A stretch of DNA of 64,000 bases from Macrostomum lignano (taxonomy: Eukaryota): contig NIVC01000087.1 in assembly GCA_002269645.1 (NCBI GenBank), positions 885,608 to 949,607 of the forward strand, written 5' to 3'. Below, piece by piece: positions 1 to 48,199 of this stretch. The position numbers and the translations under genes are program-made. Under the pieces are notes generated by a model that saw only the letters and a program-made list of their open reading frames with translations, ran no database searches and was not told the origin of the DNA. Every line of letters begins with the position of its first letter. Position 1 is the stretch's first letter.

Positions 1-305
1 CCAGGGAGACCGACGCAGCTTTTCAGGACCTCGAGCAGCCTGCCAGGCCGGCGCAAACCGAACAGCGGGATGAGCTCGTGACAGAGCTGTCGGACGAAAC
101 AATCAAAACTCTGCCTAGACCAGTAACGGCGGCCTGCTCTCTGACGCTTTACCGGAGCGATATCTCTGCGGATGAAGAACAACGCCTGCAGCAGGACCAT
201 TGACAGTGCGCTCCTCGGTTCTCGCTGCGAGTCTCGAAACAGCCGTCTCATAGCCGTGAGCACTGACACGATTCCGTCCGACTGTCCAGCCAAAATATGC
301 TTCAT
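1..305 (-). CDS. Unknown ORF, truncated by the window edge (MKHILAGQSDGIVSVLTAMRRLFRDSQREPRSALSMVLLQALFFIRRD...)
   Basis: ATG at 305-303 overlaps the TGA of the J-domain ORF (TGATG). Manual translation gives 101 codons with no stop to position 1. It is absent from the ORF track, probably because no stop lies in the window. Confidence 0.55.
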   Translation of the reverse strand, partial: MKHILAGQSDGIVSVLTAMRRLFRDSQREPRSALSMVLLQALFFIRRDIAPVKRQRAGRRYWSRQSFDCFVRQLCHELIPLFGLRRPGRLLEVLKSCVGLP

Positions 306-931
306 CAAACGATGGCGGAGCTGACGCGCAGCTGCCGATAACGACAGCTTTTCATCATCCCATATTGCTCCCGACGCGCGATGTGAGACAACCTCCTTGC
401 TTTCCGGTACATCGATCTCCATAGCTTCTGACTCACTACTTCGGAGGAGCCATCCGATGCCAGCAACTCGTCTTCTTCTTCTGTGTCGATGCTACACTCA
501 TCCGACTCCTCGCTCTCATCGTCGTCCGAGATTAGAATGTAGCCATCCGCTTCGTAATCGTTCCTCTGTCCCTGTCTCCCCTGCCTGAGACCAGCTTCCT
601 TGCGCTGAGCTTCTTCAACTTCTCGCCTTTGCTGTACTCCCTCTTCGATGTCCGCCGGCATTCTTACACCAGTAGGAGGTATGAACGTCATTGCGAAGGT
701 TACAGCCTCGTCATACGGGATTGATTTATCGCCCAACTGGTCGTACATCGCTCGGCGATATGGACACGATAGAATTCTACCAGCAGTCTCAATTTCTTGG
801 AAACGGCGTCCTGCGAGTTCCTTGTCTGGGTGCTTGTCCGGGTGCCAGAAGAGCGCTAGCTGTCGATAGACTCGCCTGATCTCGGCACGTTCGGCTGTGT
901 GTCCGACTTGGAGGACAGCGTACAAATCCAT
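305..931 (-). CDS. Intronless J-domain (DnaJ/Hsp40-like) protein, 208 aa, with acidic central region
   Basis: MDLYAVLQV...EIRRVYRQLALFWHPDKHPDKELAGRRFQEIETAGRILSCPYRRAMYD is a canonical J-domain with the HPD motif. First ATG is at 931; the track start at 964 is a GTG. Confidence 0.9.
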   Translation of the reverse strand: MDLYAVLQVGHTAERAEIRRVYRQLALFWHPDKHPDKELAGRRFQEIETAGRILSCPYRRAMYDQLGDKSIPYDEAVTFAMTFIPPTGVRMPADIEEGVQQRREVEEAQRKEAGLRQGRQGQRNDYEADGYILISDDDESEESDECSIDTEEEDELLASDGSSEVVSQKLWRSMYRKARRLSHIARREQYGMMKSCRYRQLRVSSAIV

Positions 932-1175
932 CTGCAAAGCAACGTACTCAAACCTGCGACACACTGTCCCTGACTCCAGATTCTACTCCTGCTCCCCTCT
1001 TGCCAGAGCGTCATCTCCTCGGACCGTGGCCCGCGGTACCCTGCATCGTAAAGTCCCAGCGCAAATTCGAGTTGTCACCGGATGCCAGTCCGAATACCCT
1101 CCACCGATGCATAGATTTTGTAGGCAAAATTTGATTCTCGTCAAAACTTCGATGAAGATGCGATTAAAATGACTT

Positions 1176-1280
1176 AATGACGCATTAACGAATTTCTTGA
1201 ATGACGCATTGGCGAACTGCTCGTACTCATGATGAATGATGCATTGATGAAGTACTCGTATTTATGATGAATGACGCATT
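1176..1280. promoter_or_regulatory. Four copies of AATGA(C/T)GCATT between integrase and the J-domain ORF; possible internal promoter/enhancer
   Basis: Copies at about 1176, 1200, 1235 and 1270; near-palindromic with a TGACG CRE half-site. Function is inferred. Confidence 0.35.
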
Positions 1281-1354
1281 CGCGAAATATTTTTCTGGCT
1301 TTTAACGATAATCGCATATGAAACTGATGAGACTTCACGATGACGAGTAACCCA

Positions 1355-2701
1355 TTAGAATGTCACTGGCTGGCCGTAGCGATCCGGCGGCCGTCGCAAC
1401 CTTCCGGACCTTCGAGGCTCAGGTGCAGCTTCCACCGGGTTATGAGTAGGCTGCGGGTCGTCAACCAACTCCATCTGCTCTTCCAGCACCTCGGCGACTT
1501 CCTCAGCGTCCTGTGGCGGCATCAGTTGAGGCCGAGTCCAAGTCTCGCCTTCCGCATCTGCCTCCGAGTCCGTCTCGTCGACCACTTCCGGCGGTGCCGC
1601 GGTCCTAACTGGTGTTTCCAGGGCGGCCGGTCGAGCGAACTTCCGGAGGTTGTTGAAGTGGACGAACTTCGACTTTTTACGATTTGACGGGTTTTCCACT
1701 TTGAAGAGCACCTCGGATCTTCTTTCGAGCACCTTCACTGGGCCGAGCCAGCTTACGTGAAACTTTGCGGCTTCGTCTGGTTTCAGGGCGGGGCTGTAGA
1801 CGAAGACATGGTCACCCTCCTGAATATCGGATCCTCGGGTTCTTTTATCGTACTGGTCCTTCTGTCGCCGCTGATAAGTATTCAACTGCTGTCGAGCAGC
1901 GCGATGAGCTGTCTGCAATTTGTCTTCTAGCTCCTTGACGAAATTTACATGCGAATCGACAGGCTGTGGCGGCTGGTCAGTCAAGTCTATCGGTAGGCGC
2001 ATCTCCGTGCCATAGACCATGTAGTGGGGAGTATAACCCGTTGCTCGATGCACGCTTGATCGGTACGCCATTAACGCAGAGCTGACGAATTCTTCCCAGT
2101 CGTTTCGTCCTGAGTCCTCTAGGCAGCACTTGAGGATGGATTTTAAACTTTTATTGAAGTTTTCTACTTGTCCATTTCCGCTCGGATGATAAGCTGTTGT
2201 TCTGGACTTGCGGATCTCGAGTATCCTGCACATTTCGCGCATCACTTGCGATTCGAAGTTTCTTCCTTGGTCGCTGTGCAAAGTACTCGGACACCCATGC
2301 TGGCTAATCCATCGATTGAAAAGCGCCCTTGCCACCGTCCTTGCCTTCTGGTTGCGAAGCGGGTACGCGTCAGGCCACTTCGTAAACGAATCTTGGACTG
2401 TCAGGAGATAAATGTTTCCAGCCTTACTCCGCGGTAGCGGCCCGACAATGTCCATCATGACGCAATCGAATGGTGCTGCGAATGTCAACGGTTGCAGGGG
2501 TGCTCGGTTTCGCTTGCCCGGCTTTGACTTGCAGCAGGTGGCACAACCGCGAATATATTCTTCAATGGCACGAGACAATCCTGGACGCCAGTAGCGCTGA
2601 AGCACTTTAAATTTTGTCTTCGCAAAGCCCATGTGGCCACCTCCCACTCCCTCGTGTAGGGTTTTCAAGATACGATCCAATGCCTTTCGTGGCAGCACCA
2701 T
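1355..2701 (-). CDS. pol: Retrotransposon integrase (C-terminal part of pol, out of frame by 1 nt at ~2700)
   Basis: HHCC (LHEGVGGGHMG...CATC), DDE (MDIVGP, SDQGRNFES, GQVENFN), GPY/F-like WLGPVKV and basic tail PRRSGRLRRPPDRY. CAA TGG TG would read CAA TTG GTG (QLVLP) if one T were restored. Confidence 0.93.
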   Translation of the reverse strand: MVLPRKALDRILKTLHEGVGGGHMGFAKTKFKVLQRYWRPGLSRAIEEYIRGCATCCKSKPGKRNRAPLQPLTFAAPFDCVMMDIVGPLPRSKAGNIYLLTVQDSFTKWPDAYPLRNQKARTVARALFNRWISQHGCPSTLHSDQGRNFESQVMREMCRILEIRKSRTTAYHPSGNGQVENFNKSLKSILKCCLEDSGRNDWEEFVSSALMAYRSSVHRATGYTPHYMVYGTEMRLPIDLTDQPPQPVDSHVNFVKELEDKLQTAHRAARQQLNTYQRRQKDQYDKRTRGSDIQEGDHVFVYSPALKPDEAAKFHVSWLGPVKVLERRSEVLFKVENPSNRKKSKFVHFNNLRKFARPAALETPVRTAAPPEVVDETDSEADAEGETWTRPQLMPPQDAEEVAEVLEEQMELVDDPQPTHNPVEAAPEPRRSGRLRRPPDRYGQPVTF

Positions 2702-5700
2702 TGATACTCATCGCGCCTGTCTTTGTTTCTCACAAGGAGCACGTTCTCTTGCAGCACCAGGTCGTCTTTTCGAGTCCAGACGGCTCTAGCCAGTGGACTC
2801 CAAGCTGTCTCGCTTTTATCTGGAACTGGGTTTGAGCCAAGCGCTTCCTTTACTGTTCTCAAATCGTCGTCTTGATCCTGCTCGCTTGCCAGATTGCCGG
2901 CTGAGAATCGTTCAAATTCGACTGCATTTAGTCCTTCTGGATGCTGCGCACATGCCGGGCATGTCTCCGCTCCGAAATGTCTCCGTACTGGCTTCCTCGA
3001 CATTGCGTCCGCGTTGCCATGCGATCGACCTGGTCTGTGAACGATGCGGTACTGAAATGGAGCCAACTTCTCCAACCAGCGAGCAACCTGTCCCTCGGCG
3101 TCACTGAAGTTTTTTAACCATTGCAGGCTGCTGTGGTCCGTTCGCAGACAGAACGCTTTTCCAAGCAGATAGTATCTGAACTTCATGATGAAAGTCACAA
3201 CCGCTAGTAGTTCTAAACGAGTCGTACAATAGTTGCGTTCGGCTTGATTTAGTGTCTTGGACCCATAGGCGATCACTCGTTCTGCTCCATCTGGCTGGAC
3301 TTGAGAAAGTACCGCTCCTATGCCCATCTTCGAACTGCCATCAGTATCGAGGATAAACTCTCCGGCATCCGGGGAGAAATCCGGATGAGCCATAACCTCT
3401 GAACTTGTCATTCGTTCCTTCAATGTTTCGAACGCCAGCTGCTGTTCCGTTTTCCATTCAAACTTTGCGTCTTTTGTTGTCAATCGAGTTAGAGGCGCTG
3501 CTATTGCGGCGAAATCTTTAATAAACTTTCTGTAATAGCCACACAGGCCCAAGAATGAATGCAGCTCCGTCGAGGATCGCGGTGTTGGCCAGTTCTTCAC
3601 TTCTTGAACTTTCTCCTCATCGGTACTGATGCCAGCAGCCGACAGCGTGTGACCGAGAAATTTCACTTGCTTTTGCAAAAAGTGACACTTCTGGGGCTTC
3701 AGGCACAAATTTGCTTGCCGCAACTTGCTGAATATTTCCTCCAGTCTTCTCAGGTGTTCATCCACGTCGGTTGACCAAACCAGTAGATCGTCGATGTAGA
3801 CGAGACAGGTTTTCCACATCTGCTTGTCCAGAACGGCTGCCATCAACCTGGTGAATGTTGCTGGGCTGTTCACTAAGCCGAACGGCATAACCTTCCATCG
3901 AAATTGTCCGCGATGCGGCACTGCAAACGCCGTCTTGTCCTGATCCTGAGGTCTCACCCCTACTTGCCAAAACCCGCTGTGAAGGTCCATTGTCGAGAAG
4001 ATCTTGGCGCCGTGTACTGCCTCCAGCGCATCATCGACCCTCGGCATCGGCACTGCATCCTTGACGGTGACCTCATTCAACTTCCGATAATCGACGCACA
4101 TCCTCATTTCCCCTGATTTCTTCTTTACGCACACCAAAGGAAAGCACCATGGTGACTGTGCTTCTTCGATCTGCCCCTTTTCCAGCAACTCGTTGACTTG
4201 ACGATCTACTTCTGGCTGTAAGTGGGGAGGCAGACGACGCGGTGGGATCTTGATTGGGCGCGCATTCTCGGTGTTAATTTCATGCTCCACCACGGTAGTT
4301 AACTTGCTTGAAGTCTGCTTGGTCGTGAACACATCGCTGTAACTCCGGACAAGGATTCTAAATTCTTCGTCTTCTTTCGTCGACAGTCCACAGTCGCCGT
4401 ACGAGTTTGGTAGCAAGTCTGCTTCCGAAGGGCTGTTGCTGCCTTGGACCTTCGGCTCTTCCTGTGGATCGTCTCCTGACTCTACGGCTAAGAGCTTGAT
4501 GGTGTTCAACGGTTCGGTGGATTCTAGGGGGCAGAACCACCCGAGCGTACAACCTTGGCGAATTCTGACTGGCTCTTCCGTGATATTGATGAGTCGAGTC
4601 GGCAGACGGCTGCCGCTATTTGGGATCACTAAGGCCTTAGCAAGCCAGCGGCCAGCTGCCAAATCGTTGGCTCCGAGATTCTCAGTTAGACCGACACACC
4701 CTCTGTTCCGTCGTCCTTTGCTCTCCAGCCTTGCTGACAGAACTGCTTGATGACCTGGCGGTATTGTGCTGGACCTTGTCGCCAAAATTCTGCAAACGAT
4801 CGGGCGCTCAGCTTGCCATCGGAACGGGATTGCAGTGTCCTGCACTGAAAAGACAGCTGTCTTGTAGTCGATGACGCAACTGTTGTCCCTGCAGAAGTCG
4901 GATCCCAATACCAGTTGGTACTTCACTCCGCTGACTACCAAGGCTGGAGTATCTATTACTTTATCAGCGATTGATAGTCGCAACAGGACTGTTCTCTCGA
5001 TTTCGATCGGGCTGCCGTTTGCTAAGCTAACATAGCCTTTAGCACCGGCCAAATCTCTGACGCTCTGTTTCGGCATACTTTGGTAGGCTTCCCGTGAGAT
5101 AATGGTGCAGGAAGCTCCCGAGTCCACTAGCGCGTTCACCCTCCGCCCTGCGATTGAGGCCGTAACATATATCGACGCATGATTGATTTGAATTGACTGA
5201 GGTGCGTTGACGGTGATTGGGCGCTGCGACTGTGCAAAACCGGCTAGTTGATGGTGAGGTGCAGTACCGGACGCTGGAGGCTGATGAGGCACTGTAACGG
5301 ATACTGGATGCTGATGAGACTCAGTACCGGACACTGTAGGCTGATGAGGCGCAGTACCGGACACTGGAGGCTGATGAGGCACTGTACCGGACACTGGATG
5401 CTGATGAGACACAGTACCGGACACTGGAGGCTGATGAGACGCTGTACCGGACACTGGATGCTGATGAGGCGCAGTACCGGACACTGGATGCTGATGAGGC
5501 GCAGTACCGGACGCTGGAGGCTGATGAGGCGCAGTACCGGACACTGGATGCTGATGAGGCGCAGTACCGGACACTGAATGCTGATGAGGCGCAGTACCGG
5601 ACACTGAATGCTGATGAGGCACTGTACCGGACACTGGATGCTGATGAGATGAAGTACCGGACACTGGATGCTGATGAGGCGCAGTACCGGACACTGGATG

Positions 5701-6129
5701 CTGATGAGGCGCAGTACCGGACACTGGATGCTGATGAGGCGCAGTACCGGACGCTGGAGGCTGATGAGGCACTGTAACGGACACAGGATGCTGATGAGAC
5801 TCAGTACCGGACACTGTAGGCTGATGAGGCACTGTTCCGGACACTGGATGCTGATGAGACACAGTACCGGACACTGGAGGCTGATGAGACGCTGTACCGG
5901 ACGCTGGAGGCTGATGAGGCGCAGTACCGGACACTGAATGCTGATGAGGCGCAGTACCGGACACTGGATGCTGATGAGGCGCAGTACCGGACACTGGAGG
6001 CTGATGAGATGAAGTACCGGACACTGGATGCTGATGAGGCGCAGTACCGGACACTGGAGGCTGATGAGACGCAGTGATGATGATGAGATGAGATGACGAC
6101 TTGTTCGGAGGCTGACGAATTGCAGGGGC
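2665..6129 (-). CDS. pol: Pol polyprotein: repeat spacer, aspartic protease, reverse transcriptase, RNase H
   Basis: PR LVDSGASCTII; RT CVDYRKLN, DLHSGFWQV, MPFGL, YIDD; RNaseH ILDTDGS, ELLAV, TDH. The frame is open from directly after the gag TGA (6129). Confidence 0.95.
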   Translation of the reverse strand, partial: APAIRQPPNKSSSHLIIITASHQPPVSGTAPHQHPVSGTSSHQPPVSGTAPHQHPVSGTAPHQHSVSGTAPHQPPASGTASHQPPVSGTVSHQHPVSGTVPHQPTVSGTESHQHPVSVTVPHQPPASGTAPHQHPVSGTAPHQHPVSGTAPHQHPVSGTSSHQHPVSGTVPHQHSVSGTAPHQHSVSGTAPHQHPVSGTAPHQPPASGTAPHQHPVSGTAPHQHPVSGTASHQPPVSGTVSHQHPVSGTVPHQPPVSGTAPHQPTVSGTESHQHPVSVTVPHQPPASGTAPHHQLAGFAQSQRPITVNAPQSIQINHASIYVTASIAGRRVNALVDSGASCTIISREAYQSMPKQSVRDLAGAKGYVSLANGSPIEIERTVLLRLSIADKVIDTPALVVSGVKYQLVLGSDFCRDNSCVIDYKTAVFSVQDTAIPFRWQAERPIVCRILATRSSTIPPGHQAVLSARLESKGRRNRGCVGLTENLGANDLAAGRWLAKALVIPNSGSRLPTRLINITEEPVRIRQGCTLGWFCPLESTEPLNTIKLLAVESGDDPQEEPKVQGSNSPSEADLLPNSYGDCGLSTKEDEEFRILVRSYSDVFTTKQTSSKLTTVVEHEINTENARPIKIPPRRLPPHLQPEVDRQVNELLEKGQIEEAQSPWCFPLVCVKKKSGEMRMCVDYRKLNEVTVKDAVPMPRVDDALEAVHGAKIFSTMDLHSGFWQVGVRPQDQDKTAFAVPHRGQFRWKVMPFGLVNSPATFTRLMAAVLDKQMWKTCLVYIDDLLVWSTDVDEHLRRLEEIFSKLRQANLCLKPQKCHFLQKQVKFLGHTLSAAGISTDEEKVQEVKNWPTPRSSTELHSFLGLCGYYRKFIKDFAAIAAPLTRLTTKDAKFEWKTEQQLAFETLKERMTSSEVMAHPDFSPDAGEFILDTDGSSKMGIGAVLSQVQPDGAERVIAYGSKTLNQAERNYCTTRLELLAVVTFIMKFRYYLLGKAFCLRTDHSSLQWLKNFSDAEGQVARWLEKLAPFQYRIVHRPGRSHGNADAMSRKPVRRHFGAETCPACAQHPEGLNAVEFERFSAGNLASEQDQDDDLRTVKEALGSNPVPDKSETAWSPLARAVWTRKDDLVLQENVLLVRNKDRRDEYQWCCHERHWIVS
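5248..6075. repeat. 30-bp minisatellite (~27 copies) inside pol, encoding (SGTAPHQHPV)n
   Basis: Unit ctgatgaggcgcagtaccggacactggatg; stop-free in the pol frame. Confidence 0.95.
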
Positions 6130-7050
6130 TCACTTGCCTCCAGCTGGTGGGCCCCTCTTGCCTTTTCCCGGCTTTGGGCACTGGAATGAGAGATGGCCTA
6201 TCTCCCCGCAGTTGTAGCACTTGACACCGCTACGCTGCTTCGAGCTGGACGGAGCCGCCTGCTTGGATTGTTGCTTGTCTTGAAGACCGGGTTCGGGCGG
6301 CTCCTGCTGGCCCTGCTGGATCTGCTCTATCCGTCGGATCTTTTCTTCCATTTCCTTTACTTTTTGACGCAGTTGCCGTAGCTCCTCGTCTTTGCCGGTG
6401 TCACCTGTCGACGTTTCGGTGGCAAAGGCATTCAGCCCAGCCCTGGGTCTGGCTTTGGACTGGGTCGAAGACGCCTTCTGGGCTGCTTCAAGTTGTCTTA
6501 CTGTTCGAATGGCATCGGTGAGGTTGGCCGGCTGCTGCAGGTACAGTCTTTCTCGGACAGTGTCGGTTACTCGAACGCCTTTTAGAAATCTGTCTTTCGC
6601 CAGCTCTGTCCTGGTGTCGGCATCCGCGGTGAGGAAGGCATTGCGCACCAACTCCAGCAGCTCGTCCCCGTAGGTCTCCACAGACTCCTTGTCTAGCTGA
6701 TCTCGATTCGATAATTCAAAACGGTAGTCCTGGGCTGTTCTGTTCATGGTGAACCGCGCCAGCAGTGCATCCGTGAATTCCCCGTACTCGATGTCGTCTG
6801 CCAAGTCCAGCTTATCAACGGCAGCGTAGGCTGTTGTGAGGTCGAGTAGGCCGATCAGGTGCGGCCGCCTGGCTTCTTCTTCTATACCGACAGCCTCGCA
6901 GTACTCGTTGAAACTCTGCAGCCATAGGCTGAAATTCATCGTTGGTATGTACTTGGGCGGCTTCGAGAGTCGTGGCGCTGCTCGGTCGGCGTTGGCTCTG
7001 AGGCGCGCAGCCAGCGCATCGATCAGTTGGTCCATAGCTTGATCACCCAT
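6130..7050 (-). CDS. gag: Gag (capsid-like region plus CX2CX4HX4C zinc knuckle), 306 aa
   Basis: CYNCGEIGHLSFQC near the C-terminus; retrotransposon-gag-like middle (QLDKESVETYGDELLELV...KDRFLKG). ATG at 7050, TGA at 6132-6130. Confidence 0.92.
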   Translation of the reverse strand: MGDQAMDQLIDALAARLRANADRAAPRLSKPPKYIPTMNFSLWLQSFNEYCEAVGIEEEARRPHLIGLLDLTTAYAAVDKLDLADDIEYGEFTDALLARFTMNRTAQDYRFELSNRDQLDKESVETYGDELLELVRNAFLTADADTRTELAKDRFLKGVRVTDTVRERLYLQQPANLTDAIRTVRQLEAAQKASSTQSKARPRAGLNAFATETSTGDTGKDEELRQLRQKVKEMEEKIRRIEQIQQGQQEPPEPGLQDKQQSKQAAPSSSKQRSGVKCYNCGEIGHLSFQCPKPGKGKRGPPAGGK

Positions 7051-7274
7051 GGCCGAAGTCACTGAATACCGTTGCTACTCTTTACTCTGAGGTGGTGATA
7101 GCTATCAATCTCTGATAACCAATCAGTTGTCTGTCACCGTGATCAATGTCTTTTGCGGTAGGGCAATAGCCGCAGGCGATAAGCAAAAGTCGTTTTAATA
7201 AGAAAAAACGCTCACAATATGACAGCAATTTTCATAGAAAGCAACTGAGCCGACTTTCAATCTTTGGGGACAGG

Positions 7275-7292
7275 GTCCCTGTTCGGGCGCCA
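7275..7292 (-). other. Primer binding site complementary to the tRNA-Lys(UUU) 3' end
   Basis: Minus strand reads TGGCGCCCGAACAGGGAC, 3 nt after the ...ACAACA LTR end. Confidence 0.9.
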
Positions 7293-7295
7293 ATT

Positions 7296-8114
7296 TGTTG
7301 TAACCCGGGTCGGCTTGGGTGCCCAGTCCCGAGTACAATATATATTATATGTGATATAACAGGCGTTGTGACGCTCTGTCTGTACTTTTATGAATACGAC
7401 GAGCAGGCGTGGCGACGCTCTGCGATAATAATTCGATCCCTCTGGTGTTGTGACACTCAGAGTTCACGCTGCGGCTCGAGGTGTGGTGACACTCTCGAGT
7501 GCTTCTATTCTCTATACCGTAGGGCGTACGCAATATATATGGTAAACGGTACCGTACTACAGAAGCTATATGGTCTCCCGGCGTTATGACGCTCTGGCAA
7601 GAATTCGGCCTAGCAAGCTTCCCGAAAAGAAAGGACTCAAACAGCAGGCGGCTTACCAGTGGCCAGATGACTGTTCACCGTTTATTATTCGCAGGTCTCA
7701 AGCGCAGTTTCCGACTTCTTCTTAATTCTCCAAGACTCTTCTCAATTAGGCTATTGTGTTTCTTTTATCGAAGTAGCTAATGTTGCTGTTTCTTTTATCA
7801 GGTCTCGCGCTTGCACTCTCGGAGCACACCAAAACACAAAAAGCACGCAGGTGATGGGCAAGAGCCAGAGTCGCACCATAAATAGCACCCAAACCCTGGG
7901 GCAGACGGCCCCACCGGCTAAGCTCACCAAAACAAACCACGCCGGCCCAGCCAATCAAAACCCCGCCTAAGGGGGGAGGGGCAGCACCCGCGCCAAAGCT
8001 GGCCCGGCCGCAGCCAACCAGCCCTGAGCACGGGGCAGGGGCACGGCTGGGGAGGGGCACGCGCAAAGCCCGGCCGGCGGCCAAACCCTGCCACGCCCGC
8101 CCTGCCAACTGACA
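7296..8114 (-). repeat. Candidate 5' LTR (~820 bp)
   Basis: Minus strand starts TGTCAGTTG (8114) and ends ACAACA (7296), next to the PBS. GC-rich U3 with CCAAT box (~7952), TATTTAT (7884-7878) and AATAAA (7686-7681) in U3-R-U5 order. The 8114 boundary is unconfirmed without the second LTR. Confidence 0.6.
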
Positions 8115-8446
8115 AGGGCGCATGCACTACAATTACTTTTATAGGGTGTTTTATAAGTAATTAACATTTTTGGTCAAAAATTAAGTTGCATAGTCAGGTG
8201 AAACTTTGAAGTTGGGCATGTATGTATGCCATGTATTAGGGATATATCTTTCTAAAATCTAGAAATTTTATTTTTTTACAATGACCTTACTTAAATTTAG
8301 AGATTTTTATTGTATGCTTCCTTATTGCCCACTCCAAAATCATTGCTATGCCACTATTTGATGCTTTAAATAGGCCAATGGCATTTCTGAAAGTCAAAAT
8401 ACAGCATTGTTTTCCTAAACTATATACCATTAGTCAATTGATTCAT

Positions 8447-11140: not shown

Positions 11141-11781
11141 AACAAAGAATCTCTCTGAAGTTTTTCGCATAACATATAATGACGCATACAGAGTTATGCA
11201 TTGCCTCTGTGTGTTATAGGCCAAAGTTCTAAGAATTTTTTGTATTAATTTGCGCTGTCATGACTAAAAAGTGTGCGAACTACGGTTCTTGGAACGGGGT
11301 TAGTTATTTTTTTTATAAGCAGTTTTCTTTTTACTCGCTTATTAAATATTCTCACGATTGAATTTCTTGTCTGTACTTGGCTTTAACACTAACAGCAGTC
11401 TAGCGAGGACGAGGGCTTCAGAATTCGCGCTTCCACGATAACCGAGAGGCCTGGCGATCACGTGACCGCCAATAAGCTGCCCACCGTATTCAAATGGGAG
11501 GGCGGCACCGCCAAGGAGGTGTACCTTAGCGGCAGTTTCAACAACTGGCAGACTAAGATTCCATTAGTGAAGAGGTTTGCCGCTCTCTTATTTGTTTTTA
11601 TTAGTTTTAAGTTTTCTAAGTTGTCTACTGATAGTAGCGAAAAGTTTTTTTATCGTTTTTTAGCCAGGATCATTTCTATACGATTGTGGACCTGCCGGAA
11701 GGAGAGCACCAATATCAGTTTATTGTGGACGGCAAGTGGCAGGTCAACGCTAAGGAGGTGAGAGTCTAGGTTTGTTCGGTA

Positions 11782-14700
11782 TTAGAGTGGCTCAGGGGGA
11801 ATCGGTCAGATTAACTGTGGCTCAGAGGGAATCGGTCAGATTAACTGTGGCTCAGAGGGAATCGGTCAGATTAACTGTGGCTCAGAGGGAATCGGTCAGA
11901 TTAACTGTGGCTCAGGGGGAATCGGTCAGATTAACTGTGGCTCAGGGGGAATCGGTCAGATTAACAGTGGCTCAGAGGGAATCCGTCAGATTAACTGTGG
12001 CTCAGAGGGAATCGGTCAGATTAACTGTGGCTCAGGGGGAATCGGTCAGATTAACTGTGGCTCAGAGGGAATCGGTCAGATTAACAGTGGCTCAGAGGGA
12101 ATCGGTCAGATTAACTGTGGCTCAGGGGGAATCGGTCAGATTAACTGTGGCTCAGAGGGAATCGGTCAGATTAACTGTGGCTCAGAGGGAATCGGTCAGA
12201 TTAACTGTGGCTCAGGGGGAATCGGTCAGATTAACTGTGGCTCAGGGGGAATCGGTCAGATTAACAGTGGCTCAGAGGGAATCGGTCAGATTAACTGTGG
12301 CTCAGGGGGAATCGGTCGGATTAACTGTGGCTCAGAGGGAATCGGTCAGATTAACTGTGGCTCAGAGGGAATCGGTCAGATTAACTGTGGCTCAGGGGGA
12401 ATCGGTCAGATTAACTGTGGCTCAGAGGGAATCGGTCAATTTAACTGTGGCTCAGGGGGAATCGGTCAGATTAACTGTGGCTCAGAGGGAATCGGTCAGA
12501 TTAACTGTGGCTCAGAGGGAATCGGTCAGATTAACTGTGGCTCAGAGGGAATCGGTCAGATTAACAGTGGCTCAGAGGGAATCGGTCAGATTAACTGTGG
12601 CTCAGAGGGAATCGGTCAGATTAACTGTGGCTCAGAGGGAATCGGTCAGATTAACTGTGGCTCAGGGGGAATCGGTCAGATTAACTGTGGCTCAGAGGGA
12701 ATCGGTCAGATTAACTGTGGCTCAGAGGGAATCGGTCAGATTAACAGTGGCTCAGAGGGAATCCGTCAGATTAACTGTGGCTCAGGGGGAATCGGTCAGA
12801 TTAACTGTGGCTCAGAGGGAATCGGTCAATTTAACTGTGGCTCAGAGGGAATCGGTCAGATTAACTGTGGCTCAGGGGAATCGGTCAGATTAACTGTGGC
12901 TCAGAGGGAATCGGTCAGATTAACTGTGGCTCAGAGGGAATCGGTCAGATTAACAGTGGCTCAGAGGGAATCCGTCAGATTAACTGTGGCTCAGAGGGAA
13001 TCGGTCAGATTAACTGTGGCTCAGAGGGAATCGGTCAATTTAACTGTGGCTCAGAGGGAATCGGTCAGATTAACTGTGGCTCAGGGGGAATCGGTCAGAT
13101 TAACTGTGGCTCAGAGGGAATCGGTCAGATTAACTGTGGCTCAGAGGGAATCGGTCAGATTAACAGTGGCTCAGAGGGAATCCGTCAGATTAACTGTGGC
13201 TCAGAGGGAATCGGTCAGATTAACAGTGGCTCAGAGGGAATCCGTCAGATTAACTGTGGCTCAGGGGGAATCGGTCAGATTAACTGTGGCTCAGAGGGAA
13301 TCGGTCAGATTAACTGTGGCTCAGGGGGAATCGGTCAGATTAACTGTGGCTCAGGGGGAATCGGTCAGATTAACAGTGGCTCAGAGGGAATCCGTCAGAT
13401 TAACTGTGGCTCAGGGGGAATCGGTCAGATTAACTGTGGCTCAGAGGGAATCGGTCAGATTAACTGTGGCTCAGGGGGAATCGGTCAGATTAACTGTGGC
13501 TCAGAGGGAATCGGTCAGATTAACTGTGGCTCAGAGGGAATCGGTCAGATTAACGGTGGCTCAGGGGGAATCGGTCAGATTAACAGTGGCTCAGAGGGAA
13601 TCCGTCAGATTAACTGTGGCTCAGAGGGAATCGGTCAGATTAACTGTGGCTCAGAGGGAATCGGTCAGATTAACTGTGGCTCAGGGGGAATCGGTCAGAT
13701 TAACTGTGGCTCAGAGGGAATCGGTCAGATTAACAGTGGCTCAGAGGGAATCGGTCAGATTAACGGTGGCTCAGAAGGAATCGGATTAACTGTGGCTCAG
13801 CAGGAATCGGTCGGATTAACTGTGGCTCAGAGGGAATCGGTCGGATTAACAGTGGCTCAGAAGGAATCCGTCAGATTAACTGTGGCTCAGAGGGAATCGG
13901 TCAGATTAACTGTGGCTCAGAGGGAATCGGTCAGATTAACTGTGGCTCAGAGGGAATCGGTCAGATTAACTGTGGCTCAGAGGGAATCGGTCAGATTAAC
14001 TGTGGCTCAGAGGGAATCGGTCAGATTAACTGTGGCTCAGGGGGAATCGGTCAGATTAACTGTGGCTCAGAGGGAATCGGTCAGATTAACAGTGGCTCAG
14101 AGGGAATCGGTCAGATTAACTGTGGCTCAGAGGGAATCGGTCAGATTAACGGTGGCTCAGAAGGAATCGGATTAACTGTGGCTCAGCAGGAATCGGTCGG
14201 ATTAACTGTGGCTCAGAGGGAATCGGTCGGATTAACAGTGGCTCAGAAGGAATCCGTCAGATTAACTGTGGCTCAGGGGGAATCGGTCAGATTAACGGTG
14301 GCTCAGAGGGAATCGGTCAGATTAACTGTGGCTCAGGGGGAATCGGTCGGATTAACTGTGGCTCAGAGGGAATCGGTCAGATTAACAGTGGCTCAGAGGG
14401 AATCGGTCAGATTAACTGTGGCTCAGAGGGAATCGGTCAGATTAACGGTGGCTCAGAAGGAATCGGATTAACTGTGGCTCAGCAGGAATCGGTCGGATTA
14501 ACTGTGGCTCAGAGGGAATCGGTCGGATTAACAGTGGCTCAGAAGGAATCCGTCAGATTAACTGTGGCTCAGGGGAATCGGTCAGATTAACGGTGGCTCA
14601 GAGGGAATCGGTCAGATTAACTGTGGCTCAGGGGGAATCGGTCGGATTAACTGTGGCTCAGAGGGAATCGGTCAGATTAACAGTGGCTCAGAGGGAATCG

Positions 14701-25480: not shown

Positions 25481-26029
25481 AGTTTCAAAAAGTCGATTTT
25501 TTATTGAATGGCAATTTCCATCGGTAATTAATTTTAACAATAGTCTACAGCTTAAATTATTAATTATCCCAGTGAGCTGATTAATGACACCAGAATCCCA
25601 AAATTATACCCTGCGCTATAATTTATAGTTATACAGTATTGCTTATTACGGCATTTGACAAAGTTTCTCAACACTATACTGCAAAGATTTCGTTGTCAAA
25701 GCCTTAATCAATCAGGCAGCCTAGGCGCCCATCGGCATTTTCATTTGACTTACGATTGTAATTAATAGAACTAATATTGCAGCGCCGTGTCTGTCTAACC
25801 CTAGCTCTTAGCCTCGTATTTATTACATGTAATTTATATATTAATACAATTATTAAATCTTTTATTAAAGTGTACCAGGTATCGCCACAACAGAAAATCT
25901 AATTTTAACAGCAATACAGATACAACCAATGTAACAGATCGTATTTGCGAAAGACTGCGTTTTTATTTCAAGAAACTTTTAACTCCAAAAATTCATTGCA
26001 TCATTTCCAATTATTTGCTAGCACACCAA

Positions 26030-26872
26030 CCAAGCTTCCGTTCTGGAACTCCCACTCTACAACCGAGCATCCGTTCTGGAACTCCCACTCTACAACCGAG
26101 CTTCCCATCTGGAACCTCCGCCCTACAACCGAGCTTCCCATCTGGAACCTCCGCCCTACAACCGAGCTTCCCATCTGGAACCTCCGCCCTACCACCGAGC
26201 TTCCTATCTGGAACCTCCGCCCTACAACCGAGCTTCCCATCTGGAACCTCCGCCCTACCACCGAGCTTCCCATCTGGAACCTCCGCCCTACAACCGAGCT
26301 TCCTATCTGGAACCTCCGCCCTACAACCGAGCTTCCCATCTGGAACCTCCGCCCTACAACCGAGCTTCCCATCTGGAACCTCCGCCCTACAACCGAGCTT
26401 CCTATCTGGAACCTCCGCCCTACGACCGACCGAGCTTTCCATCTGGAACCTCCGCCCTACAACCGAGCTTCCCATCTGGAACCTCCGCCCTACAACCAAG
26501 CTTCCTATCTGGAACCTCCGCCCTACGACCGACCGAGCTTCCCATCTGGAACCTCCGCCCTACGACCGACCGAGCTTCCCATCTGGAACCTCCGCCCTAC
26601 AACCGAGCTTCCCATCTGGAACCTCCGCCCTACAACCGAGCTTCCTATCTGGAACCTCCGCCCTACGACCGACCGAGCTTTCCATCTGGAACCTCCGCCC
26701 TACAACCGAGCTTCCCATCTGGAACCTCCGCCCTACGACCGAGCTTCCCATCTGGAACCTCCGCCCTACAACCGAGCTTCCTATCTAGAACCTCCGCCCT
26801 ACAACCGAGCTTCCCATCTGGAACCTCCGCCCTACAACCGAGCTTCCCATCTGGAACCTCCGCCCTACGACC
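26030..26872. repeat. 33-bp minisatellite
   Basis: Unit ctggaacctccgccctacaaccgagcttcccat, with periodic 37-bp variants (+cgac). Confidence 0.92.
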
Positions 26873-28204
26873 GATCTTAGCAGAAACTGTGGAAACTGCC
26901 ATAAACAGTAAACAGAAAAGCGCAGAGTTTCAAAATTCGGGGATACTAGCGCACAATTAGTTTTTATCAGAATTTAAATCAGAATTTAAATCAGAATTAA
27001 ACGCTAATTTCTTATAAGTCGATCATGTTTTAAAAGACAAAAAATAGTGTATACCTGGCCTTTATTGTTCATCTTTATATAGCAAACAGTTTACTTAATA
27101 GTTGGCCTACTAACAAGTAGCGAGAGAAGAATGTGAAGCCCGAGTACAAAACAACGCTTTGAGCAGTTCGCAGTTAAACGTGGCCTGCCGTCCGCCGGGG
27201 GGGGGGGTGGGTGGCTTGGGCACTGCAGTAAAACAAGACGGCACAAATATCGACCCGCAGTTATGTCTACTTCGCAGCTGACCCCTGCAAGGGCGCTGCT
27301 GTGTCCTCCTTGATGGTGGGATGCGGGAGAGGGCGGCGTACAAGGACAACTTAATTTGATCAAATCTAGAACCTGGAGCGAGGACTCCAATGAAAATTGC
27401 TTTTAATTTATAACTTTGAAGACGATTGAAGTTGAAATTCCAGATTCTACACCAATTACTGATCGAGTCTCCTTGACAGAAAAATTCGAGGGACTCGAGA
27501 TTAGAAGAGGAATCAGATGATAAAAAAGAAGGTTGCAAAATAAGGGTATCAAAGACACCTGTCTAGATTCGTGGACCTCCAAGTAGCAGCAGCCCGGACT
27601 AGAAACGAGCGGAAAATTTAATTGGTTTTTCGTCGAATTTATTAACTCTTTGAAACTCAATTCTCAGCACATGTGCTTCGGTGGTTGGTCCTCATGGCTG
27701 CGAATCTCACGACAACCTCCCGGCCAAGTTTTCCCGCACACAAGCCACAAACGGAATCGAACCAGGGGTCGCGGCGCCTCTGGTATAGTAGTTAATTGGA
27801 TTATAAATAATATCAACAAAAACGCTGACATGTATTAAAAAAATTACGCTATCATTATTATTATTGTTACGTTAGAGTTTAGCCGAGATATTACTTGTTT
27901 TTGTCCCGGTTCCAGTCCAGAGGCTTATATCCAGGCATCCTTGATAGGGTATTTTCTGTCAAATATTGCCATTCGACCAGCGCGCCTATTACAGCTTTTA
28001 CAGATTCGCGTGGGCGCTCGCCCTCGGCTAATAAACTGTACTCACCTCTGTGTGATTGGCTGCGCTCACCTATAAATTATTCAGAGACGACTTGCTCTTG
28101 ATGAAGCTTTCATATGCAATATCATAATTTCACTCAATCGTAAGTAACCACCATTTGGATTCTCCATTGCCTAAGGCATTGTCTAGGTTTTCAACCCTTC
28201 AGGG

Positions 28205-29455
28205 GGATATTGCTTTGATTCCCCAACCCCTACAGGAAGATATCGCGAGATTCCCCAACCCATTCAGGAAGATATCGCGAGATTCCCCAACCCATTCAGG
28301 AAGATATCGCGAGATTCCCCAACCCATTCAGGAAGATATCGCGAGATTCCCCAACCCATTCAGGAAGATATCGCGAGATTCCCCAACCCATTCAGGAAGA
28401 TATCGCGAGATTCCCCAACCCATTCAGGAAGATATCGCGAGATTCCCCAACCCATTCAGGAAGATATCGCGAGATTCCCCAACCCATTCAGGAAGATATC
28501 GCGAGATTCCCCAACCCATTCAGGAAGATATCGCCAAGATTCCCCAACCCATTCAGGAAGATATCGCGAGATTCCCCAACCCATTCAGGAAGATATCGCG
28601 AGATTCCCCAACCCATTCAGGAAGATATCGCGAGATTCCCCAACCCATTCAGGAAGATATCGCCAAGATTCCCCAACCCTTCAGGAGGATATCGCCAAGA
28701 TTTCCCAACCCTTCAGGAGGATATCGCCAAGATTTCCCAACCCTTCAGGAGGATGTCTCTAAGATTCCCCGACCCTTCAGGAGGATGTGCCTTGATTCCC
28801 CAACCCTTCAGAAGGATATCGCCGATAATCCCCAACCTTTCATGAGGATATCGCGAGATTCCCCAACCCTTGAGGAGGATATCACCGAGATTCCCCAACC
28901 CATTCAGGAGGATATCGCCGAGATTCTCCAACCCTTCAGGAGGATGTCTCTAAGATTCCCCAACCCTTCAGAAGGATATCGCGAGATTCCCCAACCCTTG
29001 AGGAGGATATCGCCGAGATTCCCCAACCCTTCAGGAGGATATCGCCGAGATTCCCCAACCCTTCAGAAGGATATCGCCGATAATCCCCAACCTTTCATGA
29101 GGATATCGCGAGATTCCCCAACCCTTGAGGAGGATATCACCGAGATTCCCCAACCCATTCAGGAGGATATCGCCGAGATTCTCCAACCCTTCAGGAGGAT
29201 GTCTCTAAGATTCCCCAACCCTTCAGAAGGATATCGCGAGATTCCCCAACCCTTGAGGAGGATATCGCCGAGATTCCCCAACCCTTCAGGAGGATATCGC
29301 CGAGATTCTCCAACCCTTCAGGAGGATGTGCCTTGATTCCCCAACCCTTCAGAAGGATATCGCCGAGATTTCCCAACCCTTCAGGAGAATGTCTCTAAGA
29401 TTCCCCAACCCTTCAGGAGAATGTCTCTAAGATTCCCCAACCCTTCAGGAGGATT
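28205..29455. repeat. 31-32-bp minisatellite
   Basis: Unit gattccccaacccattcaggaagatatcgcga. Confidence 0.92.
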
Positions 29456-45945: not shown

Positions 45946-46920
45946 TTACAATGCAAGCGGTCAGACAGCGACGACAAGCAGCCTTGCGAAATTTGGGCCT
46001 CGACAGCGAATCGAGCGATTAATCATTTGTCACTGCTGAGAGCGAGGGAGAGGGAGGTGGCGAAAATCAAGCACGCAACGATGGGACGGAGGAAGACGAT
46101 CTGGGAATGATGCACGATGATTGGAGATCAGTAACTCCAGAGACTGATGCTCATTCTCTTCCCGAGTTCCTCGGGGCAAGCGGAGTCAATCCGGGATTCT
46201 TTGTACCTGCTGATGTTGACGACGGCTGGACAGCTATTTTCGAGCAGTTTCTACCCGATGATGTGCTTTCTACGCTTCAGATGTGCGTGTGGACAAACAA
46301 GAGAGCGCAGCTGGATATTGCCAAGTATGTACTGGCGTTGTACAGAAACCGGAGCTGACGGCTTACTGGTCCACGGACCCGTTCTACTTCCATCCTACTT
46401 TCAAAGCATGAAGATGCTCTTCCGCTAGCTGTTTCAACGAATCATGACATGGCTGCGTTGCTATGACTGTCTTGACTTCGGCGCTGATGATCCCTTGTGC
46501 AAGATCAGACCATTCCTAGACACTATCCGGACAGTTTACAAGAACAGCTACCTGCCCGGTCAAAATATTGCCGTTGATGATGCGCTGCTGCTCTACAAGG
46601 GGAGGCTGCTTTTTAAGCAGTACATGCCCAACAAGAGAGCCAAGTTTGGCATCAAGTTGTACTGCCTTGCCGAGTCTTCTACAGGCTACATGTGGAACTG
46701 TCTGGTTCATTCAACCACCATTGCGAATGAACAGTTCGCCAACGATTTGCTTCAGCTCTCAATCAGTGAGAGAGTCGCGTCGTAGAACTTTGTCGCGACG
46801 TCCTGGACCTTGGATATCGGGTCTTTTGCGACAGTTGGTTTTCATCAGTGCGACTGGCCAAGTTCCTACTGACCAAAGGAACAACCTTAACTGGGACCGT
46901 TCGCAAAGACCGAGGCGTTC
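45946..46920 (+). mobile_element. Decayed piggyBac-family transposase (frameshifts, stops, truncated by a minisatellite)
   Basis: Fragments W..PEFLGASG..FEQFL..TNKRA, AYWSTDPF, DPLCKIRPFLD, IAVDDALLLYKGRLLFKQYMPNKRAKFGIKLYCLAES, CDSWFSSVRLA..LTGTVRKDRGVP match piggyBac DDD-core motifs. A TTAA at 45663-45666 is a candidate left end; no right TIR was found. Confidence 0.85.
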
Positions 46921-47850: not shown

Positions 47851-48199
47851 CCAAATATTGGCAGCTTAGGATTGCAGCCCTTCCAATCATAATAAAGGTG
47901 CACTACTCAATGTAGTTCTACCTGGAGTGCCTAATATATCGCAATTAGTTATCTATTCCGCAATACAGCTGCTGCTGCGGATGCTCATGGTTTTGAGTCC
48001 CCCCGCACCCGCCACCCCAGTAGAGCATTCAGCAGCAGCTGCTGGGGGGACCCGCCTGTCTCATGCCTCCCCTCCTCGGCGGAGTCACTTAAAGTTTACC
48101 CTTCTTGTTGTCCCGTGCGCATGGCGACTGGCACAACTGTGGGCAATGGGCACAGAGAGAGATGGATAGAAAAATGAATTGAAATAACTGACAGTGCTG

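What the first reader, a model, noticed from the sequence alone, without database searches (positions are those of the whole stretch)
305..1355. Gypsy retrotransposon apparently carrying a J-domain (Hsp70 co-chaperone) gene in the env position
Seen: an intact, intronless HPD-type J-domain ORF begins ~420 bp after the integrase stop on the same strand, with similar composition. No copy of the 7296-8114 LTR sequence lies between them, so the ORF appears to be inside the element. Established: J-domains recruit Hsp70; polyomavirus T antigens carry their own J-domain; Hsp70/Hsp40 chaperones influence Gag assembly. I do not know of a J-domain as a standard Ty3/Gypsy accessory ORF. Inference: the element may encode its own Hsp70 adaptor for VLP assembly, Gag/Pol folding or remodelling of host-defence complexes.
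Basis: partly seen in the sequence, partly recalled or inferred. Interest (0 to 1): 0.88.

Follow-up and report, generated by a model that had tools for sequence, protein, structure and literature searches.

The report
Gypsy retrotransposon carrying its own J-protein gene
A small lineage of Gypsy-type jumping genes carries, where retroviruses keep their envelope gene, a third gene for a J-domain protein that should recruit the host's Hsp70 chaperone; I found no earlier report of such a cargo in a retrotransposon.

Summary
On the minus strand a Ty3/Gypsy element runs from a putative LTR and primer-binding site through gag and pol. An HPD J-domain ORF (Pfam DnaJ, E=2e-18) starts 423 nt after the integrase stop, and no LTR copy lies between them.

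The ORF is only part of a gene. Relatives show a 264-351 aa protein: J domain, acidic linker, and a very basic five-helix C-terminal domain with no known fold match. In this copy the C-terminal domain sits in a second reading frame and runs off the window edge, so ORF3 carries one frameshift. Pol also carries one.

Four diverged element lineages have integrase followed by this gene on the same strand. One is a 7-kb contig with intact gag and pol, where the gene lies between pol and the polypurine tract and 3' LTR start. J-carrying integrases form a clade (89% bootstrap). The gene's GC3 tracks that of the neighbouring pol. YAG lies 0-1 nt before the ATG in 5 of 5 loci, which suggests a spliced subgenomic mRNA.

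Hsp70 recruitment is a strong inference; the client is unknown. I found no literature precedent.

The parts
7296..8114 (-). Putative 5' LTR (819 bp, TG...CA)
   Evidence: A GC step occurs at ~8120-8150. The LTR starts TGTCAGTTGG and ends ...CAACA, 3 nt before the primer-binding site. The start resembles the L005 LTR start, and both contain GATTGGCT boxes. There is no second copy in the window, so the bounds are inferred.
7275..7292 (-). Primer-binding site, 18 nt
   Evidence: It is read directly and is identical (18/18) to L005 819-836, which sits in the same place after that element's LTR. Its assignment to a lysine tRNA is recalled, not tested here; no tRNA gene is in the window.
7210..7215 (-). 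Candidate 5' splice site (GTGAGC) in the leader
   Evidence: It is the only GTRAG in the stretch from the primer-binding site to 150 nt into gag. L005 likewise has a single one (GTGAGT), 6 nt after its primer-binding site. Inference only.
6130..7062 (-). gag (310 codons, open)
   Evidence: zf-CCHC matches at E=7.8e-8 and Retrotrans_gag matches weakly. It is 49% identical to L005 gag in one alignment.
5124..6203 (-). 30-nt tandem array (~36 units) spanning the gag end and the start of pol
   Evidence: the repeat finder family D1. It reads as a 10-aa repeat that is kept open in the pol frame. L005 has no such array.
1355..6129 (-). pol: protease, reverse transcriptase, RNase H, integrase. Broken: one frameshift. 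An in-frame stop separates it from gag.
   Evidence: Pfam finds Asp_protease_2, RVT_1 (5e-38), RT_RNaseH, Integrase_H2C2, rve and Integrase_p58_C. L005 pol aligns over its length in two pieces in two frames.
932..1354 (-). Spacer between the integrase stop and the ORF3 ATG (423 nt), containing four 35-nt repeats at 1174-1302
   Evidence: GC is 0.456, lower than the coding parts. It does not align with the spacers of relatives, which are 82-245 nt long.
932..934 (-). Candidate 3' splice site (CAG) abutting the ORF3 ATG
   Evidence: YAG lies 0-1 nt before the ATG in 5 of 5 loci, and L104 also has a long pyrimidine run. The chance estimate is ~9e-7 if the loci are independent. Inference only.
1..931 (-). 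ORF3, the J-protein gene. Broken: one frameshift. Its 3' end runs off the left edge of the window.
   Evidence: It belongs to a family with P0126, P0129, P0130 and the L104 ORF. The public protein P0123 matches both window frames at 309/309 residues and reads them as one frame.
740..928 (-). J domain (residues 2-64) with the HPD motif
   Evidence: Pfam PF00226, E=2.1e-18. The profile of relatives matches DNAJC5, DNAJB1 and DnaJ J domains at 1e-18 to 1e-15. The modelled J domain of relative P0129 superposes on the DnaK-bound J domain 5nro_B (TM 0.86, rmsd 1.3 A).
3..353 (-). Conserved basic C-terminal domain, lacking its last few residues
   Evidence: phmmer against P0126, P0130 and P0129 gives 1.5e-16, 4.7e-12 and 1.8e-9. 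There are 20 invariant columns across four lineages. pI is 11.7. The model of the P0129 domain has pLDDT 83.6 and pTM 0.77 and is a five-helix bundle.

Best explanation
The J-domain ORF is the front part of a third gene (ORF3) that belongs to a lineage of Ty3/Gypsy LTR retrotransposons. It lies between integrase and the polypurine tract/3' LTR, where errantiviruses and retroviruses carry env. The gene encodes a soluble 264-351 aa class-C J-domain protein with three parts: an N-terminal HPD J domain, a strongly acidic linker, and a very basic five-helix C-terminal domain found nowhere else. Shown here: the gene's architecture, its linkage to integrase in four diverged lineages, its position inside the element in one full-length relative, its conservation, and its element-like composition. 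Inferred: (a) it is translated from its own ATG on a spliced subgenomic mRNA, with the donor in the leader and the acceptor abutting the ATG; (b) the J domain docks on host Hsp70 and triggers ATP hydrolysis; (c) the C-terminal domain selects the client. The client is most likely the element's own nucleoprotein (genomic RNA, Gag, or the acidic integrase tail), so that Hsp70 is brought to particle assembly, disassembly or reverse-transcription complexes. The copy in the window is probably dead: pol and ORF3 each carry one frameshift. The confidence given (0.8) is for 'an element-borne J-protein gene that acts through Hsp70'. By step: element-borne about 0.9, Hsp70 co-chaperone about 0.7, own particle as client about 0.4.
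For: J domain: Pfam E=2.1e-18, HPD in all five family proteins, and matches to solved J domains by structure and by profile. Family definition: in an exhaustive search of 1.84 billion representatives, only P0123, P0126, P0129 and P0130 share the C-terminal domain. Linkage:
- L005: gag, an intact 1254-aa pol, then ORF3 82 nt later.
- L004: integrase C-terminus, then ORF3.
- L104: the closest full-length integrase to the window's (50% identity), then a J-domain ORF 99 nt later, cut by the contig end.
Inside the element: in L005, ORF3 (5865-6659) is followed by a purine tract at 6986-6996 and then by 12 nt that match the 5' LTR start at 11/12. The 18-nt primer-binding site is the same in the window and L005. 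Integrase tree: the window, P0004, L104 and L005 form a clade with 89% bootstrap, apart from relatives without the gene. ORF3 GC3 tracks the neighbouring pol in every locus and differs from three of the four long host ORFs. YAG precedes the ATG in 5/5 loci, and one GTRAG lies in each of the two available leaders. There is no transmembrane segment. The C-terminal domain has pI 11-11.7 and the linker pI 4.1. Precedent for chaperone-dependent reverse transcription: the hepadnaviral polymerase needs Hsp70/Hsp40 to bind its RNA (PMC2094093).
Against: The 3' LTR, polypurine tract and target-site duplication of the window's own copy lie outside the window, so its ORF3 is placed inside the element by analogy with L005. 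L005's 3' LTR is seen for only 12 nt because the contig ends there. Only five lineages are known, all on short metagenome or Logan contigs of unidentified hosts, and three of them may come from one sequencing project. No expression data were available, so the splice sites are only consensus-level matches. The tree is a simple neighbour-joining tree of 13 sequences. Hsp70 stimulation and the identity of the client are untested. The window copy is broken, so nothing here shows a working gene in this genome. The exception is P0123, which reads ORF3 in one frame but is a chimeric gene model.
Confidence: 0.8

Rival explanations
1. ORF3 is element-borne and works through Hsp70, but its client is a host factor rather than the element's own particle. 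It would turn Hsp70 against a restriction or silencing complex, or compete with a host J protein that acts in silencing.
For: The architecture (J domain plus a private targeting domain) fits this as well as self-assembly. The J domain of polyomavirus T antigens is used to remodel host complexes (own knowledge). A host J-domain protein, SILENZIO, works with HSP70 in silencing of transposons in Arabidopsis (PMC8616336). The C-terminal domain has no detectable relative among gag, pol or known viral proteins.
Against: No host partner can be named. The very basic C-terminal domain (pI 11-11.7) sits in an element whose integrase tail is acidic and which packages RNA, so a self-client is at least as simple. 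The SILENZIO precedent is from plants, whereas this host looks like an animal.
Confidence: 0.25
2. The J-domain ORF is a host gene, and a 3'-truncated Gypsy copy merely lies next to it.
For: No 3' LTR is visible in the window. The element copy is degraded. A public gene model (P0123) treats the region as part of a cellular gene.
Against: The same gene follows integrase on the same strand, at 82-423 nt, in four lineages with only 44-53% integrase identity. It lies before the polypurine tract/LTR in L005. Its GC3 is that of the element, not of three of the four host ORFs. No stand-alone homologue was found in any collection. P0123 is a chimera in which Pfam recognises only DnaJ and an integrase piece.
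Confidence: 0.04
3. ORF3 is a one-off transduced piece of a host J-protein gene in a recent sub-family, without function for the element.
For: LTR retrotransposons do pick up host sequences. The window copy's ORF3 is frameshifted.
Against: The full architecture, including a private C-terminal domain with 20 invariant columns, is kept in lineages as diverged as 26-47% protein identity. The three full-length relatives have uninterrupted ORFs of 264-351 codons. J-carrying integrases form one clade.
Confidence: 0.03
4. The domain is a J-like fold that no longer acts on Hsp70 and is used as a plain structural or interaction module.
For: No activity data exist. In the full-length model of P0129 the J domain has only moderate confidence (pLDDT 66-73).
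Against: HPD is kept in 5 of 5 lineages. The helix II basic residues and the helix III/IV motifs are canonical. The profile matches working cytosolic J domains at 1e-18, and the fold superposes on a DnaK-bound J domain.
Confidence: 0.08

Closest known systems
LTR retrotransposons with a non-envelope ORF3 (bdelloid rotifer Vesta/Juno families: GDSL esterase, DEDDy exonuclease, coiled-coil or TM ORFs; PMC5408684)
   Same: A family-specific extra gene lies between pol and the 3' LTR. It was acquired by a lineage and inherited with it. Different relatives carry different cargo; here L103 has an unrelated 251-aa ORF3.
   Different: The cargo is a J-domain co-chaperone with a private C-terminal domain. 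It is not among the ORF3 types listed in that paper or in the reviews I searched.
Errantiviruses (Drosophila gypsy and relatives): env as ORF3, expressed from a spliced subgenomic RNA (PMC5408687, PMC8096092)
   Same: The position of the third gene is the same, and the likely expression route is the same: a leader donor joined to an acceptor just before ORF3.
   Different: There is no signal peptide and no transmembrane segment, and no resemblance to fusion glycoproteins. The protein is cytosolic or nuclear in character, not an envelope protein.
Virus-encoded J domains: polyomavirus T antigens (own knowledge); J-like genes in T4-like phages (PMC1524935, seen only as a title)
   Same: A mobile genetic parasite carries its own HPD J domain at the N-terminus of a protein whose remainder chooses the target, thereby borrowing host Hsp70.
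   Different: This is a different class of element (an LTR retrotransposon). There is no homology outside the J domain. Among solved structures the nearest J domains are cellular DNAJC5, DNAJB1 and DnaJ.
Retrotransposons that captured other cellular enzymes: cytosine methyltransferases (de Mendoza 2018, PMC5890265, seen only as a cited reference); m6A demethylase domain in orchid Ty3/Gypsy (PMC9289625)
   Same: A host-type functional domain is fixed in an LTR retrotransposon lineage, presumably to manipulate host machinery.
   Different: A different pathway is involved (protein folding and remodelling rather than nucleic-acid modification), and the cargo is a separate ORF rather than a domain fused into pol.
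Cellular class-C J-domain proteins (for example DNAJC5; DNAJC9 by recalled architecture)
   Same: An N-terminal J domain is followed by a specialised client-binding region. There is no G/F region or zinc finger.
   Different: The C-terminal five-helix basic domain has no sequence or fold match to any solved structure (best Foldseek E 0.33; profile hits only to designed helical bundles). The gene is linked to integrase rather than sitting at a host locus.
Chaperone-dependent reverse transcriptases: hepadnaviral P protein activated by Hsp70/Hsp40 (PMC2094093)
   Same: It shows that a reverse-transcribing element can depend on the Hsp70/J-protein cycle for template binding. This is a plausible job for ORF3.
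   Different: In that case the J protein is the host's; here the element would bring its own. No evidence yet links ORF3 to the RT step.

Membership tests
Ty3/Gypsy (Metaviridae) LTR retrotransposon | gag with a zinc knuckle, and pol domains in the order PR-RT-RNase H-IN | tested here: met
   Pfam hits occur in that order along 7062..1355. RT is 66% and IN 52% identical to the full-length relative L005.
Ty3/Gypsy (Metaviridae) LTR retrotransposon | Primer-binding site directly after the 5' LTR | tested here: met
   An 18-nt site at 7292..7275 lies 3 nt after the ...CA end and is identical to that of L005.
Ty3/Gypsy (Metaviridae) LTR retrotransposon | Two LTRs, a polypurine tract before the 3' LTR, and a target-site duplication | tested here: inconclusive
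   Only one putative LTR is in the window, because the 3' end lies beyond base 1. In relative L005 a purine tract and the first 12 nt of the LTR follow ORF3.
J-domain protein (Hsp40/DNAJ), class C | J-domain sequence and fold with the HPD motif between helices II and III | tested here: met
   PF00226 E=2.1e-18. HPD is present in 5/5 family members. The model of P0129 matches solved J domains.
J-domain protein (Hsp40/DNAJ), class C | No G/F region, zinc-finger domain or DnaJ C-terminal domain (these define classes A and B) | tested here: met
   DnaJ is the only Pfam hit on the window ORF, P0126, P0129 and P0130.
J-domain protein (Hsp40/DNAJ), class C | Stimulates the ATPase of an Hsp70 partner | not testable with these tools
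   This needs biochemistry. Only sequence and fold conservation speak for it.
Retroviral/errantiviral envelope gene | Signal peptide, transmembrane anchor, fusion-protein fold | tested here: not met
   The maximum Kyte-Doolittle mean over 19 residues is below 1.6 in all members. The models are all-helical and soluble. There are no viral fold matches.
Polyomavirus T-antigen type J domain | Specific sequence relationship to T-antigen J domains | tested here: not met
   No T-antigen chain is among the 44 PDB sequences matched at E<=1e-8. All hits are cellular or bacterial DNAJ proteins. The resemblance is functional only.
Host (cellular) gene | Occurs at LTR-free loci, independent of integrase, with host-like composition | tested here: not met
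   All four loci with upstream sequence show integrase. GC3 follows the element. No stand-alone relatives were found. Synteny in related genomes could not be tested.

The most novel reading that the evidence does not exclude
An old, monophyletic lineage of Ty3/Gypsy retrotransposons encodes its own Hsp70 co-chaperone, a class-C J-domain protein with a previously unseen basic five-helix client domain. It is expressed like an env gene from a spliced subgenomic RNA. This would be the first retroelement known to bring its own J protein rather than rely on the host's.
Probability: 0.6. Interest if true: 0.8.

Novelty: new variant of a known kind. Interest (0 to 1): 0.72.

Why it matters
Retroviruses, hepadnaviruses and yeast Ty elements are known or suspected to lean on host Hsp70/Hsp40 systems, but always on host-encoded J proteins. 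An element that carries its own J protein marks the step at which chaperone recruitment is limiting enough to be worth about 1 kb of genome. Its private C-terminal domain is a handle for finding the client. It also widens the list of cargo that LTR retrotransposons can hold in the env slot. It adds a second kind of mobile parasite, besides polyomaviruses and some phages, that has converged on owning a J domain. Practically, it warns annotators: the only public protein covering this gene is a 3375-aa chimeric 'host' gene model.

Tried and rejected
- Second LTR copy, or any other copy of the element or ORF3, in the 64-kb window: none found. The 27-nt similarity between 91-117 and 7943-7969 (78%) lies inside the conserved C-terminal coding region and is taken as chance.
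- Stop/start overlap at the end of the visible ORF, suggesting a coupled fourth ORF: rejected. Relatives and P0123 read the two parts as one protein, and the 'start' methionine aligns with an internal residue.
- Exact look-ups of the window's ORF3, integrase and P0123 in the contig index: not on record. The window could therefore not be extended leftwards and the host genome could not be found.
- Word-indexed homology searches with ORF3, and with the family alignment, were swamped by generic DnaJ proteins. Only the exhaustive representative search found the family.
- Pattern scans of JGI metagenome contigs, IMG/VR and prokaryotic genomes gave only generic J domains and no C-terminal domain.
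- Relatives L001, L002 and L003 (Exaiptasia) have no J gene after integrase. L103 has a different ORF3.
- Fold and profile searches for the C-terminal domain gave nothing meaningful. A recalled resemblance to DNAJC9's architecture found no support.
- Spacer alignment across loci showed nothing conserved except YAG-ATG.
- P0123 against the window as a test of selection: 0/309 differences in ORF3 against about 7/460 in pol once alignment-edge artefacts are set aside (Fisher p=0.046). This is too weak to use.
- Host identification by Rfam and tRNA scan gave nothing. 'Flatworm' remains unverified.
- dN/dS was not attempted, because relatives are too diverged (26-47% protein identity) and no close DNA copy was available.
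Full report
**What is in the window.**
On the minus strand of the first 8.1 kb lies a Ty3/Gypsy-type LTR retrotransposon.
- A GC-rich block at 8114..7296 starts with TG and ends with CA. Three bases later an 18-nt primer-binding site follows (7292..7275).
- gag (7062..6130) has a CCHC knuckle.
- After one in-frame stop comes pol (6129..1355), with protease, reverse transcriptase, RNase H and integrase in the Gypsy order.
- A 30-nt tandem array of about 36 units sits between the gag knuckle and the protease and is kept open in frame.
- Compared with the intact pol of relative L005, the window's pol aligns over its whole length but in two frames, which means one frameshift.
- The integrase ORF stops at 1355. 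After a further 423 nt, an ORF opens at 931 with MDLYAVLQV... It matches Pfam DnaJ over the full model (E=2.1e-18) and has the HPD motif.
- Neither repeat finder nor blastn finds a second copy of the LTR, or of anything else from the element, anywhere in the 64 kb.

**The ORF is only part of a gene.**
The frame that follows the ORF's stop is open for all 101 remaining codons up to base 1. An exhaustive HMMER search of 1.84 billion representative proteins found 24,342 J-domain proteins. Only four of them also match this second frame:
- P0123, a 3375-aa public gene model. It is identical to both window frames (309/309 residues) and reads them as one continuous protein.
- P0126, P0129 and P0130 (309, 264 and 351 aa).

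Aligned, these define a family with three parts:
- an N-terminal J domain, including a family-typical ILSCPxRRWLYD stretch;
- a strongly acidic linker of variable length (pI 4.1);
- a conserved, very basic C-terminal domain of about 120 aa (pI 11-11.7, 16-18% arginine) with 20 invariant columns across four lineages.

In the window copy this gene is split over two frames by one frameshift, and its last few codons lie beyond the window edge.

**Is the gene part of the element?**
Every family member with upstream sequence available has integrase in front, on the same strand.
- L005, a 7008-bp JGI metagenome contig, shows LTR, the same 18-nt primer-binding site, gag, an uninterrupted 1254-aa pol, and ORF3 82 nt later. 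About 330 nt after the ORF3 stop comes a purine tract, followed by 12 nt that match the start of its 5' LTR at 11 of 12 positions. The contig ends there.
- L004 (Logan) has the integrase C-terminus, then ORF3 245 nt later.
- L104 (Logan) carries the closest full-length integrase to the window's (50% identity over the whole length). A J-domain ORF with HPD, an acidic stretch and the first helix of the C-terminal domain follows 99 nt later and is cut by the contig end.
- L006 is too short to show its upstream neighbour.

The integrases of these elements are only 44-53% identical to each other, so the linkage is old and not a property of one recent insertion. Three further observations agree:
- In a neighbour-joining tree of integrase cores, the window, P0004, L104 and L005 form a clade (89% bootstrap). 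Relatives whose downstream sequence lacks the gene form another: L001, L002, L003 from Exaiptasia, and L103.
- In each locus the GC3 of ORF3 follows that of the neighbouring pol (window 0.56-0.61 vs 0.56-0.59; L005 0.73 vs 0.78; L004 0.60 vs 0.58; L104 0.55 vs 0.60). Three of the four long host ORFs in the window have 0.74-0.77.
- Scans of metagenome, viral and prokaryotic collections found no stand-alone relative with the C-terminal domain.

The 'host gene beside a truncated element' reading is therefore very unlikely. The window's own 3' LTR and target-site duplication still lie off the window and could not be checked.

**What the protein looks like.**
- The family profile matches solved J domains of DNAJC5, DNAJB1 and bacterial DnaJ at 1e-18 to 1e-15, and only over the J domain.
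- The AlphaFold model of P0129 places a four-helix J domain that superposes on the DnaK-bound J domain of 5nro (TM 0.86, rmsd 1.3 A). The linker is disordered.
- Modelled alone, the C-terminal domain is a confident five-helix bundle (pLDDT 83.6, pTM 0.77). It has no meaningful match in the PDB or in predicted viral structures (best E 0.33 and 0.68), and profile hits only to designed helical bundles.
- There is no G/F region or zinc finger and no transmembrane segment.
It is a class-C J-domain protein and not an envelope protein.

**How it is probably expressed and what it probably does.**
The spacers between integrase and ORF3 do not align between lineages. Even so, CAG or TAG lies 0-1 nt before the ATG in all five loci, and in L104 it follows a long pyrimidine run. 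If the loci were independent this would have a chance of about 1e-6. The two available leaders each hold exactly one GTRAG, shortly after the primer-binding site. This is the layout by which errantiviruses express env from a spliced subgenomic RNA (PMC5408687). It is an inference here, because no transcript data could be consulted.

On function, HPD J domains dock on Hsp70 and trigger ATP hydrolysis, while the rest of a J protein chooses the client (established knowledge; for example PMC7289447). My best guess is that the basic C-terminal domain binds the element's own RNA, Gag or acidic integrase tail, and so brings Hsp70 to particle assembly, disassembly or the reverse-transcription complex. 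Chaperone dependence of a reverse transcriptase is documented for hepadnaviruses (PMC2094093). The main rival is a host client, such as a restriction or silencing complex. A host J protein acting with HSP70 in transposon silencing is known in plants (SILENZIO, via PMC8616336). Nothing here decides between the two.

**State of this copy.**
- gag is open.
- One in-frame stop separates gag from pol. This may be natural, although L005 has gag and pol in different frames.
- pol has one frameshift and ORF3 has one frameshift.
- P0123 shows that the same genome, or a close one, holds a version that reads ORF3 in one frame. That version also differs from the window at about 7 of 460 pol residues. It could be another copy or another haplotype, and the comparison is too thin to test selection.

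**Comparison with what is known.**
Extra ORFs between pol and the 3' LTR are well known: env in errantiviruses; GDSL esterase, DEDDy exonuclease and coiled-coil or TM ORFs in bdelloid rotifer elements (PMC5408684); various aORFs in plants (PMC7264820). Captured methyltransferase or demethylase domains are also reported (PMC9289625). Eight full-text searches and targeted reading found no report of a J-domain gene in an LTR retrotransposon. The library lacks most subscription journals and Repbase reports, so this absence is not proof. I rate it a new variant of a known kind: a known slot with new cargo, which has a clear biochemical meaning and a novel partner domain.

**Limits.**
- The host species of the window and of all relatives is unidentified. 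The window has CPEB-like and PKD-domain genes, so an animal is likely.
- Five lineages is a small sample.
- Three of the contigs may stem from one sequencing project.
- The function is inferred from domain identity alone.

Noticed in passing
window 5124-6203: A 30-nt tandem array of about 36 units lies inside the element between the gag zinc knuckle and the protease. It is kept open in the pol frame as a 10-aa repeat (HQHPVSGTAP-like). The full-length relative L005 has no such array.
   Followed up: partly
window 1174-1302: Four 35-nt direct repeats (TGAATGACGCATT...) lie in the spacer between the integrase stop and ORF3. They account for part of the longer spacer in this copy (423 nt against 82-245 nt in relatives).
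   Followed up: no
window 11772-13789, 25945-26880, 28155-29336, 46568-47915, 54021-55957: The host part of the window is crowded with long tandem arrays that read as open frames on several strands and frames (10- to 20-aa repeat units). P0123 also translates such repeats.
   Followed up: no
window 32403-34211 (-) and 57178-58992 (+): There are host-type ORFs: a CPEB-like RNA-binding protein (RRM_7, E=3e-29) with long Q/A runs, and a PKD-domain protein (E=5e-16). They point to an animal host. Rfam and ARAGORN find no RNA genes in the 64 kb.
   Followed up: partly
L103 3549-4304: A related Gypsy element from JGI metagenome 3300040954 carries a different 251-aa ORF3 130 nt after integrase. It has no Pfam match and one hydrophobic stretch. 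The env slot in this group evidently holds varied cargo.
   Followed up: partly
L002 1990-7983 and 10599-16595: An ENA contig holds an 8.6-kb tandem duplication (99.9% identity), with an integrase gene in each unit and several unannotated minus-strand ORFs.
   Followed up: no
window 7275-7292 and L005 819-836: The 18-nt primer-binding site is identical in two elements whose RT is only 66% identical. From memory it is of the lysine-tRNA type; this was not tested.
   Followed up: no
P0123 (public protein, 3375 aa): It is a chimeric gene model that stitches protease and integrase fragments, the whole ORF3 and about 2500 residues of repeat translation into one 'protein'. Pfam recognises only DnaJ and an integrase C-terminal piece. 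It shows how this element gene is hidden in public annotation.
   Followed up: yes
window 6130-6132 region and L005 1889-2018: The gag/pol junction differs between relatives. The window has an in-frame stop and the same frame for gag and pol. L005 has gag and pol in different frames. Whether the window's arrangement is natural read-through or a by-product of the tandem array is open.
   Followed up: no
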